A DNA stretch of 64,000 nucleotides from NCBI RefSeq assembly GCF_002113885.1, contig NW_018407075.1, positions 699,784-763,783 of the forward strand, read 5' to 3'. The first letter of the stretch is position 1. Every line of letters begins with the position of its first letter. Below the pieces are notes generated by a model. That model ran no database searches. It was not told where the DNA came from and saw only the letters and a program-made list of their open reading frames with translations. This DNA comes from Mizuhopecten yessoensis. Lineage: Eukaryota. Position numbers and translations under genes: made by a program. Of the stretch, positions 34,508 to 38,899 are shown one piece after another.

Positions 34508-35973
34508 TCATACCCTCCTCTTCTGCGTACTGATGTATAATACTGAAAAGAAAGAGAAGAATTTCATTGCTAAAAGTGATTTCCCTATATGCATTGAACC
34601 AATAAATAAGAACATCTATATAATTATTTTTCATGTTTCATATAGATTAACATTTCGTCAATTTTATTGTTTTTGGGTAATTTTTGCTGTGTCCATTTTA
34701 AAGTAATTTGTCATTTTGGAAATAATAAGATATTATTTAAACCACCTAGCAAACAAATGTGTGTCAGACTATTTCTGATGCACAATCAAATAAATCAGGA
34801 CAAGTCGATGTTATTTCAACTTCTTTGGAAACAATCAATATACTTTACAATCGCAGCAAAAGTTATTTTCTTGATACCGACGCGATCGACACTACTGACT
34901 CAAATTTGTTATTGGTTAAGCATTTTGTCTGGTGCATTCCTAGTCTGTTTTGAGGGCTGTTTCATTATTAATTGTATCAGGGAGGTAGGCCACATCTGGA
35001 TCAACATATTATGAGTGGCACAGTTAAATCCAGATTCATCTACAGTTGTTGACATGTTTTAAATCATTTTCAATATTAGATGTGTGGTGAAGCCAAGCCT
35101 TTGAAAAATACCTCGCTTAGTCTAAACTTCTACTTCAGTAGTCTAGCATTCAGATATTACATTCAATAAAATAACTTAAGTACTGGAGAAAAGTAAAACT
35201 TCAATTTTGCAATTCACCTTTTCAAAATTGCATCATTCAAGCTCTGCCAGGCTTGGTTTCATATATACACACCCATTAGCTTCCCTAACTGTCATTATAG
35301 CTTTCCTATGGAAAGTGTTATGTCAAGGAATGTTTGTGAAATATATGCCGTTCATAGAATTTATATACCTACCATTGTTCCCTCTGATGAAAGCATCGCC
35401 ATATTTGTTTTTTAGTTGGCCATTTACATATTCCTCTGTCTGCTCCAAAGCAATGTTCATGTACCCATCCAAACAGGCTAGCACACCTTCAGATACAAGC
35501 GAATCAAGTGATTAGAGCAATTTTTATTCCAATTGTCTAATGATTCCATTTCTCAAGCAGATAAAGTCTGCCCTAATTCAATACAATTTGTTTTCCCCGG
35601 TAAAATTAGCAGGTCTGTGGTCCAAGGAACCAGGAATCCAACAGTACACAACATACTAACATCAGTTTTTTTTTTAAAATTTAACTTGTTGCAACTTTCA
35701 ACAACGACAACATATTAATTTTTATTGAAGTTCTAAAATTTAGAAATTTTGCTTATCTTTTGCAATGAATTAATAAAACATAAGACGGGCAGAGGAAAAT
35801 ACCAAAATGGATGTCTTTTTCATAAGAAATGCTTACAAATGCCACAATAAGGAAGACACAACATAAGGTAAATATACCTTACCTCTGTAATCCACACCTG
35901 AGTTCAGCTTCACTACTACAGGGCGCCCAATAATTTGCTTCAAAAATTCACTCGGTGTCTGTTTTCTACTCAT
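34508..35973 (-). CDS. LSM6: U6 snRNA-associated Sm-like protein LSm6; 3 coding exons, 79 aa
   Basis: Exons 35973-35883, 35486-35373, 34542-34508 give MSRKQTPSEFLKQIIGRPVVVKLNSGVDYRGVLACLDGYMNIALEQTEEYVNGQLKNKYGDAFIRGNNVLYISTQKRRV*; acceptor at 35976 just before the ATG implies a 5' UTR exon, candidate donor GTAAGT at 39700-39695; minus-strand AATAAA near 33592. Not in the ORF track. Confidence 0.96.
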
Positions 35974-37110
35974 TTCTGAAATACAATAAAAATATTGTTA
36001 AAATATTATTAAGGATCACTATCCCACGGCACTGGTTTTTCATACGATATACAGTAACCTCTCTTTATTTGTTTCTGGATAACTGTTTGGGCCAATGAAG
36101 ACACTTCCCGATCCATTGACTACCTGGTAAGTGGCTCAGTCGCTTAGAGAAATACAGCATAACAATATCAATTCCAGGGTTCCAGTCCCAGTCTAGCCCC
36201 TTTGATAACAATTTTCATATAAAAAAAAAGTACTCATATAAAATTTTCATAAAAGTCCAATAAAGTATGGTTCCTTTCAGGAATTATTTATCAAAGCTAT
36301 ATTCATGTCGGTAAAAACAGTTTTCAATGCATAGTGTAGCAGGAACACTTTTATTCCTGCTAGGTATACTCTCAGTTCTGTCTTGTGAGACAGCCACATC
36401 GTAGCGTTTGTATGTAATAGCGCCGCCTAGTGGTAGGTTGTCAATTGGGAATTCCCCTGTGCTATTTTTGGCACCGGTGGTAGGTGTCCCACGATTTTGG
36501 TAAGGTTCATGGTTTGGACTGGCCAAACAGGTTGGACTAGGGTCAAACTAGGTGGGTCCAGGGTCAGAAGGCAGGGCTAGGTCCAGTATGTAAGGGAATG
36601 TGCAGGTGTGTGGTTAGTTCTGGCGAAATTTTGGATTGGGAACTGGCCAGAGCTTCCATTCGGCTTGGGTCACTAAATCTATGTTTCGGTTTTTTCAGCG
36701 GCCTCTGTTGACTCCTGGGTTCAAGTTTAGCCTGGGAACTGGCCATGGCCGAGAGTCGACAGATACTGGCTTTATAGCTATAGCCTTTATTCTAAATTAT
36801 TCGTCGTCTAGCATAGGCGAGTTGTCTAATTCGTCAGAGTATGTCTATTATGAGTATTGCTTGTTGTATATAATGCTGGAGGAGGGGGGGGCGTCATTTC
36901 GAAGGGTATCTTGTGTAAATAAATTTGTACTGTATATAATTATGATAATTATTAATAATGATATTGGAGTTGAGATAATCACTCAAGTGTGACCACTGAT
37001 GGCCATATGACCAAATGACAGTAAACTGCGAGCTGGCCCTGCTGTGTACAACAGTTACATGTAGTCACCCAAGCATGACTGATGATGTGTATGAATGAGG
37101 CTGTGCCCTT

Positions 37111-37719
37111 AGGTAGCAGTATACAGTAGAGGGTTGTGGCCATGGGTGATATTTTTGTTGAATGGCTAACCCCTGTATAATGATATGTAAAAAAAATATA
37201 AAAATAAAACTGTACTAAAATTGGTATAAGCATGATGAAGTGGGCTGTGTGAGCTTCACATTTGTAAAAAAGCGAGAATAAAAATTTTGCCATAATTCAA
37301 AAGGGTGCCTACAGATGAAAAGCTAGCTTTACAGGAGGTAAAATTTTGACAACACACGACGCAAAATTGCAAAAAATCAAGTTTAACAACTTTACTGGGA
37401 CCCAGATAATTCTGCAACCAGGTAGGTAATCTTTAATTTCAGACAGAACTCAGGAAAAAAATTACTAGTTGCGAGGGTCAAATTTTGGTTCAAAAATAGC
37501 AATTTTTGGCATTTTTTGATGTGGTAACCATGGTTTTCACACAAGTGATATACATAGAAAAAAGAGGTTTATACACTTCTCAGTACTTTATATGTATTAT
37601 AAATAAAATGCAGTTTACAAATATATATACATGTATAGGGTAAATGCGCTGTGTTTACATTTCCTTGACATGTGCCTTGTTTATCAGAGTCGGGCCATTT
37701 CTACTGTATACTGCTACCT
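37111..37719. mobile_element. Non-autonomous DNA transposon with 20-bp perfect TIR (Kolobok-like ends)
   Basis: AGGTAGCAGTATACAGTAGA (37111-37130) / TCTACTGTATACTGCTACCT (37700-37719); flanks resemble a decayed TTAA. Confidence 0.75.
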
Positions 37720-37740
37720 TATGGGTAAAATAAAAAAAAA

Positions 37741-38220
37741 AAACACACTGCCAACCCGGTTAGACATCACTGCAATATTTGCTTCAAATCATACTGCCGC
37801 CTAGACGTTGCGAAAAACCATGTACGTAAAATACATCCAGACTCGGACCCTAAAGAGACCGTATCTTCTGCCCTTTACAATCCGCAATCTGAAGCTAAGA
37901 AACCAAAAGCATGGACCCCACCACCAGAGGCCCGTACCATCAACAAACTGAGCAAACCTACCTTCCGTATTGTACAAGATACTACTGATTATACCAGGAG
38001 TTCTACCACCACTTTAGAAGAAGACCTGGCTCTGAGTGACACGGACTCAGAGTCGGACACCAACAGTAATGAACCTATGTCGTCGAGTTTTGAAGACTAT
38101 AATTATGTACACGAGGGTTCCACCTCTGTTCTGGACTCTACCTTTTGTCTAGATGAACTACCATATTATTTAAGAGATAGAACTGTATCTGTATATAGTG
38201 TATATGGCATCTATAATTGA
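37741..38220 (+). pseudogene. Start-less 159-codon ORF with C2H2 zinc finger (probably 5'-truncated mobile-element cargo)
   Basis: KHTANPVRHHCNICFKSYCRLDVAKNHVRKIHPDSDPKE...KPKAWTPPPEART...LEEDLALSDTDSESD...VYGIYN*; C-x2-C-x12-H-x4-H at 37771-37836; in-frame stop upstream at 37726-37728. Confidence 0.7.
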
Positions 38221-38405
38221 CTCTGCAATTACTACAAACATTCTATGAGAAAGCGGTTAACTTTATTAATCTATCAGTAAACACGTTCAACTACTATTAC
38301 CATAATTTAGCGGGTAAATTACCACAATATTGTATATCACGTGACGAGAACAATCAATTTCTTGAACCGTAATTTACACCTTAGCTTTATTTTTCTCGAT
38401 GCAAA

Positions 38406-38453
38406 ATTGTTCTGATGACGGTTGGCCTAGCCAACCGAAACATGTAAACTAAT
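38406..38453 (+). ncRNA. Minimal type I hammerhead ribozyme motif (Penelope-like)
   Basis: Stem I GTT/AAC (extends ATTGTT/AACTAAT with a bulge); CTGATGA 38412-38418 plus extra C; 7-bp stem II GGTTGGC/GCCAACC; GAAA 38437-38440; palindromic stem III ACATGT; GUA site (cleavage after 38446); AATAAA 38451-38456. Confidence 0.8.
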
Positions 38454-38825
38454 AAATTCTAAACCTACGGAATCCTTGGTGTTGATGCTCCATCCTTTAT
38501 CAAGTTGTTAAAAAAAATAAGAGTTAAATAAAAAAAATAGGAGTAAAATGAAACATCAGGGAGTAATTTAACTTGTCAGGGATTAACTTTCTTATGAGTA
38601 AAATAATACATACATGGTAGAGAATTACTCATTGCTGGGTTTTTCACCCCACATTCTTTATATTGCTACTTTCCCTTTTCCTTTGCCCAAACCTGAGAAT
38701 TTTACTCCTTTGTCTAGTCACCAGTGGGGTGCAATACCTAGAAATATATAAGTTCAGGAGCCCAATTGTTTTAATAGTATAGCTGGCTGAGCTATTAGCG
38801 GAACTGGACTGGGTCGATAGTCGGC

Positions 38826-38897
38826 GACCAGATAGCTCAATTGGTAGAGCATCCGTCTAGAGTTCGGAAAGTACCAGGTTCGAACCCCGGTATGGTG
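38826..38897 (+). pseudogene. tRNA-like sequence (AGA anticodon loop, short variable arm); likely tRNA-derived LTR or SINE head
   Basis: GACCAGA-TAGCTCAATTGGTAGAGC-A-TCCGT-CTAGAGT-TCGGA-AAGTA-CCAGGTTCGAACCCCGG-TATGGTG; mismatches in acceptor, anticodon and T stems. Confidence 0.65.
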
Positions 38898-38899
38898 TC

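What the first reader, a model, noticed from the sequence alone, without database searches (positions are those of the whole stretch)
37732..38510. Zinc-finger ORF followed by a hammerhead ribozyme: candidate protein-coding retrozyme / non-autonomous Penelope-like element
Seen: antisense inside the first LSM6 intron lies an uninterrupted 159-codon frame (37741-38220) with no upstream start (hence absent from the ORF track). It encodes a C2H2 finger (CNIC-x12-H-x4-H), a WTPPPEAR motif and an acidic LEEDLALSDTDSESD segment. 191 nt after the stop, on the same strand, is a well-formed minimal hammerhead (38412-38446) followed by AATAAA, and the cassette is flanked on both sides by TAAAAAAAA-like tracts (possible TSD). 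Established: minimal type I hammerheads with palindromic stem III mark the terminal repeats of Penelope-like elements, whose ORF is normally RT plus GIY-YIG, and retrozymes are normally non-coding. Inference: this is a 5'-truncated copy of an element that uses a Penelope-type ribozyme end but carries a small zinc-finger protein instead; the leading KH may be the tail of a lost upstream finger. I do not know of a described family like this.
Basis: partly seen in the sequence, partly recalled or inferred. Interest (0 to 1): 0.85.

Follow-up and report, generated by a model that had tools for sequence, protein, structure and literature searches.

The report
Penelope retrotransposon with H3-mimic zinc-finger gene
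This is the dead tail end of an autonomous Penelope-type retrotransposon from a clade that carries an extra, conserved gene I could not find described, whose protein has two zinc fingers and starts like the tail of histone H3, so it may let the element tamper with host chromatin silencing.

Summary
The ORF and the hammerhead are real, but this is not a retrozyme. Window 37741-38510 is a 5'-truncated copy of an autonomous Neptune/Nematis-type Penelope-like element (PLE); its closest genomic kin carry RT and GIY-YIG directly upstream. The zinc-finger frame is a separate third gene (ORF3) inside the pseudo-LTR: ORF1, RT/GIY-YIG, stop-start junction, ORF3, hammerhead. The layout recurs on 19 contigs of this genome, in Ylistrum, Pecten, Mytilus and metagenome contigs. 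The 19 ORF3-bearing elements tested sit on one side of a 99%-supported RT branch, apart from 7 without ORF3. ORF3 is under purifying selection (dN/dS 0.06-0.11 between scallops). Intact ORF3 has two C2H2 fingers and an N-terminus matching histone H3 residues 1-9 in register (up to 8/9). A degenerate pattern for it hits 8 places in 988 Mb: two H3 starts, five ORF3 starts, one unassigned. The papers I read describe single-ORF EN+ PLEs or an upstream ORF1, not this gene. Histone mimicry as a function is inferred, not shown. The window copy lacks the start, the H3-like tail and finger 1. Earlier scan notes saw only PLE hammerheads.

The parts
37741..38510 (+). 5'-truncated copy of an autonomous Penelope-like element (3' 770 bp: most of ORF3, 3' UTR, hammerhead, tail)
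   Evidence: DNA homology to other copies starts at 37741 and ends at 38503-38512; RNA-like contigs of a sibling copy match exactly 37741-38510
37741..38220 (+). ORF3, last 159 codons plus stop; the first 44 codons (ATG, H3-like tail, most of finger 1) are missing here
   Evidence: L033 and L032 hold the missing start; dN/dS
37744..37746 (+). Last histidine of zinc finger 1
   Evidence: L033 reading frame
37771..37836 (+). C2H2 zinc finger 2
   Evidence: AlphaFold model of homologue L065 has two beta-beta-alpha fingers at pLDDT 85-93
37912..37971 (+). Conserved W-x-P-P-x-E ... F-R-I motif
   Evidence: alignments A2, A3
38014..38040 (+). Conserved L-x-E-D-L-x-L-S-D motif
   Evidence: nearly invariant columns in A3
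38140..38157 (+). Conserved T-x-C-x-D-E motif
   Evidence: invariant T, D, E in A3
38409..38449 (+). Minimal type I hammerhead: stem I 38409-11/38447-49, core 38412-18, stem II 38420-26/38430-36, palindromic stem III 38441-44; predicted cut after 38446
   Evidence: (98.6% of cells paired, 36 compensatory cells)
38447..38510 (+). Tail past the cleavage site (start of the next unit), including AATAAA 38451-38456
   Evidence: sibling copies end here or run on into the element's 5' region
37731..37739 (.). Probable 9-bp target-site duplication, left copy (T+A8)
   Evidence: sequence; low complexity; an independent DNA-like run has one A fewer here, which makes the fit exact
38509..38517 (.). Probable target-site duplication, right copy (overlaps the element end by 2 nt)

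Best explanation
SHOWN: the cassette is the 3' end of an autonomous EN+ Penelope-like retrotransposon with three frames: ORF1 (about 185 aa, separate frame), ORF2 (RT + GIY-YIG, about 745 aa), ORF3 (180-250 aa in the core group, up to about 600 in divergent members), then a minimal hammerhead. ORF3 and the ribozyme lie in the pseudo-LTR. ORF3 is a selected protein-coding gene inherited with the RT. Its intact product has an N-terminus resembling histone H3 residues 1-9, two C2H2 fingers and short conserved motifs in a disordered tail. The window copy lost everything upstream of finger 2 and is inert. FROM KNOWN PLE BIOLOGY: the element moves by target-primed reverse transcription starting in the tail; two ribozyme copies in a tandem transcript cut as a dimer and release a unit-length RNA. 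INFERRED: ORF3 is translated by stop-start reinitiation after ORF2, or as the first ORF of the upstream pLTR. After Met removal its tail acts as an H3 mimic that binds or decoys H3K4/H3K9 readers, writers or erasers, while the fingers bind nucleic acid, most likely the element's own pLTR, to keep the element expressed. Confidence is about 0.95 for the architecture and about 0.5 for a chromatin role through H3 mimicry.
For: RT/GIY-YIG upstream in family members. 1,069-bp identical pLTR containing all of ORF3 in L054. GIY-YIG hit directly upstream of ORF3 on 19 contigs of this genome (cross-read). Same layout in L063, L064, L065, L067, L069-L073, L075, L076, L077, L079-L082, L086, L088, L097, L102, L104. 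One label change on the RT tree, support 99. ORF3 tree recovers two ORF2 pairs with 97% support. dN/dS 0.107 (p=4e-21) and 0.06 between scallops, 0.17-0.39 among window-family pairs. H3 match: mean 3.9 of 9 identities in register against 0.2-1.3 for shifted registers and 1.0 for shuffles; 16 of 24 sequences have 4 or more identities against 1 of 198 background proteins. Genome-wide pattern: 8 hits, 0 in the control. RNA-like contigs from three studies cover the cassette and not the adjacent unique flank.
Against: No experiment shows an ORF3 protein or its binding partners. The H3 likeness was noticed after the fact and the sequences are related, so the shuffle statistics overstate independence. 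The window family has K, not R, at position 2, and 8 of 24 sequences (L069-L073, L076, L088, L102) have 2 or fewer identities. phmmer of the N-terminus against PDB found no histone. The RNA status of the runs is a guess and contigs cannot show strand or ends. No conserved reinitiation structure was seen upstream of ORF3. One window-family pair (L031/L032) has dN/dS 0.72, not significant.
Confidence: 0.55

Rival explanations
1. Same three-ORF element, but the basic N-terminus is only a nuclear localisation signal and ORF3 is an RNP chaperone or target-site factor whose fingers bind element RNA or target DNA.
For: The tail is K/R-rich; one ORF2 start also scores 4 of 9 against H3; several divergent members lack the tail; retroelements commonly carry nucleic-acid chaperones (own knowledge).
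Against: A1, T3 and T6 are kept at fixed distance from the initiator Met across families with different ORF2/ORF3 spacing (-14 to +105 nt), which an NLS does not need; one genome copy matches H3 at 8 of 9.
Confidence: 0.25
2. ORF3 is an H3 mimic that represses rather than protects the element: a self-limiting repressor that recruits NuRD or LSD1 to the pLTR promoter.
For: Unmethylated H3 N-terminal mimics bind NuRD (PMC8166343); the clade's families appear low-copy in this genome, though counts are lower bounds.
Against: No direct evidence either way; sibling copies appear transcribed.
Confidence: 0.15
3. One reading: a non-autonomous, protein-coding retrozyme carrying a zinc-finger ORF instead of RT.
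For: Many ORF3-hammerhead fragments without RT exist.
Against: Those fragments have staggered 5' ends inside ORF3; nearest kin carry RT/GIY-YIG; no ORF3-hammerhead tandem array without ORF2 was seen. A circle from the pLTR alone would need a second cut site.
Confidence: 0.03
4. Chance juxtaposition of two insertions, or an exon of a single-copy host gene.
For: Public annotations name homologues PRDM16-like, EVI1-like or KRAB.
Against: Four of the five such annotated genes checked sit directly after a GIY-YIG end and all five are next to hammerheads; ORF3 and the ribozyme are 142-482 nt apart in 14 elements.
Confidence: 0.01

Closest known systems
Canonical C-terminal EN+ PLEs of the Neptune/Nematis clades (Craig et al. 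2021, PMC8557442)
   Same: RT followed by GIY-YIG with CX2-5CxxC linker finger and CCHH motif, pLTR partial tandems, inverted 5' pieces, tail, minimal hammerhead.
   Different: Described as single-ORF, or with an ORF1 separated by a frameshift. A separate downstream two-finger C2H2 gene inside the pLTR is not mentioned in the passages I read.
[quoted passage not shown]
   Same: Long stem II, extra nucleotide before stem II, short stem I, palindromic stem III suited to dimers.
   Different: No difference; the ribozyme is ordinary.
Non-LTR retrozymes (bioRxiv 10.64898/2026.07.22.740005)
   Same: Type I hammerhead, PLE pLTR ancestry.
   Different: Retrozymes are non-coding tandem repeats; this is a single truncated copy of a coding autonomous element.
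Terminons/Athena and esterase-bearing Neptune PLEs (PMC6431247, PMC5408684)
   Same: PLEs with extra ORFs.
   Different: Their listed cargo is exonuclease, esterase, coiled-coil, Rep or stand-alone EN; Terminons are telomeric. No C2H2 or H3-like ORF was found in those texts.
Histone H3 N-terminal mimics (H3TMs, PMC8166343; viral mimics, PMC6028506)
   Same: iMet-small residue-[R/K]-x-K start; ORF3 also matches T3, T6, R8, K9.
   Different: Those are host or viral proteins with tested binding; none cited is retrotransposon-encoded, and ORF3 binding is untested.

Membership tests
Penelope-like elements (EN+) | RT followed by C-terminal GIY-YIG | tested here: met
   Pfam RVT_1 and GIY-YIG in L054, L032, L033; absent from the window copy through truncation
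Penelope-like elements (EN+) | pLTR partial tandem, inverted 5' pieces, tail | tested here: met
   L054 1,069-bp direct repeat; inverted pieces in L063, L064, L075, L012, L014, L020
Penelope-like elements (EN+) | Minimal hammerhead in the pLTR | tested here: met
Penelope-like elements (EN+) | Single ORF (optionally an upstream ORF1) | tested here: not met
   three frames in L054, L065, L067, L069; this is why it is filed as a variant
Neptune/Nematis clades | CX2-5CxxC linker finger and CCHH motif | tested here: met
   invariant C129, C133, C136, C173, C176, H195, H211 in A5
Neptune versus Nematis | RT tree placement against reference elements | not testable with these tools
   no Repbase reference sequences or paper supplements were available
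Non-LTR retrozymes | Non-coding tandem repeat with a hammerhead in each unit | tested here: not met
   coding under selection; no such array seen for this cassette
Non-LTR retrozymes | Circular RNA | not testable with these tools
   only contigs were available; no back-joint across the cassette
H3 N-terminal mimics (strict iM-Z-R-X-K) | Sequence motif in clade members | tested here: met
   L082, L077, L078, L081, L104, P0223; genome hits C4037, C5228, C68524
H3 N-terminal mimics (strict iM-Z-R-X-K) | Sequence motif in the window's own family | tested here: not met
   K instead of R at position 2, though 7 of 9 identical overall
H3 N-terminal mimics (strict iM-Z-R-X-K) | Binding to H3 readers or modification by H3 enzymes | not testable with these tools
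   needs biochemistry

The most novel reading that the evidence does not exclude
A widespread, apparently undescribed clade of three-ORF Penelope-like elements encodes, in its pseudo-LTR, a sequence-specific zinc-finger protein with a functional histone H3 tail mimic that counters host chromatin silencing: a retrotransposon counterpart of viral histone mimicry.
Probability: 0.4. Interest if true: 0.9.

Novelty: new variant of a known kind. Interest (0 to 1): 0.72.

Why it matters
EN+ Penelope elements are described as RT-endonuclease elements with at most an upstream ORF1. A conserved third gene changes that picture for a whole clade and shows that some bivalve 'PRDM16-like', 'EVI1-like' or 'KRAB' gene models are retroelement genes. 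If the H3-like tail works as a mimic, it gives a small, directly testable case of how an animal retrotransposon may fight silencing. Even without mimicry, the three-ORF layout raises the question of how three proteins are made from one ribozyme-cut RNA.

Tried and rejected
Rfam: no hammerhead hit; a custom model was needed. Pfam on the truncated window ORF: nothing significant. PDB search with N-termini: no histone hit, the motif is too short. An RNA-like contig ending at 38446 looked like cleavage evidence; rejected because a T/A polymorphism at 38416 among copies would break a 31-mer contig at exactly that place, and two other contigs read through. The L054 pLTR/body junction as a spliced intron: rejected, no GT-AG fit against the L063 homologue. 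Conserved structure before the ORF3 start: none. The first RT tree had a frame error in L032 and was redone. The full-library phmmer search was swamped by multi-finger proteins. The viral contig scan found nothing. The ESM Atlas gave only generic C2H2 clusters. The empty insertion site was not seen.

Full report
Observation. Both junctions are present in an independent large, DNA-like run. The LSM6 coding start is at 35973 on the minus strand, so 'first intron' depends on an unverified non-coding exon. The genome is a scallop by its closest named relatives; its size matches Mizuhopecten yessoensis from memory, which I did not verify.

What it is. A DNA search of the genome gave 53 matches, mostly short 3' ends and many as inverted pairs. 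Two close copies settle the question. L033 (95-100% identical where it overlaps) and L032 (80-85%) carry RT and/or GIY-YIG sequence directly upstream, and the zinc-finger frame starts at its own ATG, which overlaps the ORF2 stop by 8 nt. The 44 missing codons contain a first C2H2 finger ending in the window's leading KH. A more distant family (L054) is a complete partial tandem whose identical 1,069-bp pseudo-LTRs each hold the GIY-YIG end, a whole 199-aa zinc-finger ORF and the hammerhead. Cross-reading the ORF3 and GIY-YIG searches puts ORF3 directly behind GIY-YIG on 19 contigs; other PLE families in the list have no such hit. Siblings have 12-bp TSDs and 3' ends about 50-65 nt past the predicted cut, the usual PLE tail (PMC11167929).

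Spread. The same order occurs in Ylistrum balloti and Pecten maximus, where ORF3 is annotated as a host gene, in Mytilus coruscus, and in contigs of unnamed hosts. Complete copies show three frames: ORF1 of 184-200 aa, ORF2, ORF3. ORF1 weakly matches the fused N-terminus of an outgroup PLE protein (P0018, E about 1e-4). On a quick RT/EN tree, 19 ORF3-bearing elements are separated from 7 without ORF3 by one branch with 99% SH-aLRT support (midpoint root, no bootstrap, three short rows). The ORF3 tree groups L054 with L073 and the window family with L065, as ORF2 does. The hammerhead covaries across 14 elements: 98.6% of cells paired, with the stem III palindrome kept through 8 compensatory changes.

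ORF3 is a gene. dN/dS is 0.107 (L054/L063) and about 0.06 (L054/L064, near saturation), similar to ORF2 (0.14); window-family pairs give 0.17-0.39, except one non-significant pair at 0.72. Pfam finds C2H2 fingers. AlphaFold gives two confident fingers in an otherwise low-confidence chain. Three RNA-like runs from different studies hold a sibling copy about 98.5% identical over the cassette, two with at least 1,061 further nt upstream, and have no depth on the unique flank at 38540-38770. Their RNA status is a guess and the upstream letters were not shown.

The H3-like N-terminus. Intact ORF3 proteins mostly begin M-A-[K/R]-T-K-x-T-x-R-K, in register with histone H3 residues 1-9. Across 24 sequences the mean identity is 3.9 of 9, against 0.2-1.3 for shifted registers and 1.0 (maximum 1.75) for shuffles; 16 of 24 reach 4 or more, against 1 of 198 other proteins. 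A degenerate DNA pattern for this start matches 8 places in 988 Mb and the reversed control none: two encode the H3 start (one overlaps a Pfam histone hit), five lie at the end of a GIY-YIG hit, and one with an in-frame stop is unassigned. One ORF3 start differs from H3 at a single position. Caveats: I noticed the motif after the fact and built the pattern from it, the sequences are kin, a third of them lack it, and an NLS is a simpler rival.

How it most likely works. Mobility follows known PLE biology: TPRT by ORF2 from the tail, and dimeric ribozyme cleavage of tandem transcripts (PMC4209133, PMC11167929). One genomic hint of real cleavage is that the upstream pLTR of L054 ends exactly at the predicted cut and joins a body lacking about 150 nt, as expected if RT jumped onto a ribozyme-cut RNA end (a single case). 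In the core group the ORF3 start lies within -14 to +10 nt of the ORF2 stop, which suggests stop-start reinitiation (inference). I infer that ORF3 is a chromatin-acting accessory factor: Met removal exposes an H3-like tail, and the fingers give nucleic-acid specificity. Anti-silencing is my first choice, NLS plus RNP or targeting factor second, self-repression third. The window copy has no start codon, tail or first finger and is inert.

Comparison with what is known. It is a C-terminal EN+ PLE with the linker finger of Neptune/Nematis (PMC8557442). It is not a retrozyme. The papers read describe a single ORF, an optional frameshifted ORF1, or esterase and Terminon cargo. Seven paper searches on PLEs or transposon histone mimicry found no downstream C2H2 or H3-like ORF. 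Repbase, Dfam and subscription papers were not searchable, so prior annotation cannot be excluded. Earlier scan notes on this genome report PLE hammerheads and an esterase ORF1, not ORF3.

Verdict. New variant of a known kind, interest 0.72.

Noticed in passing
window 23895-23948 (+): Second PLE-type minimal hammerhead of another family (50.5 bits with model R1), with T at core position 3, downstream of a short tandem repeat.
   Followed up: partly
window 38796-38898 and 15516-15585 (+): tRNA-like hits; very high depth and many loose ends at 38796 suggest a tRNA-derived SINE.
   Followed up: no
window about 37110-37721: High-copy repeat ending about 20 bp before the insertion.
   Followed up: no
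L054:4094/4095: Upstream pLTR ends exactly at the predicted hammerhead cut and joins a body lacking about 150 nt; possible genomic trace of ribozyme cleavage.
   Followed up: partly
L077, L079, L080 downstream of ORF2: The H3-like start lies in a 95-aa frame separated by about 300 nt from a roughly 600-aa two-finger frame; possibly an intron in ORF3.
   Followed up: no
joint 38414/38467: A foldback hammerhead fragment of this family is far deeper in three RNA-like runs (63-109) than in the DNA-like run (13); probably inside an abundant host transcript.
   Followed up: no
L033 and L054: Both insertions sit in short-unit satellite arrays.
   Followed up: no
P0001, P0048, P0220: Public gene models named PRDM16-like, EVI1-like and KRAB in Ylistrum and Mytilus are PLE ORF3 copies.
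   Followed up: yes
L057 and L061 ORF3: A PIDLS sequence precedes the conserved EDL motif, resembling a CtBP-binding PxDLS motif (own knowledge); not conserved across the clade.
   Followed up: no
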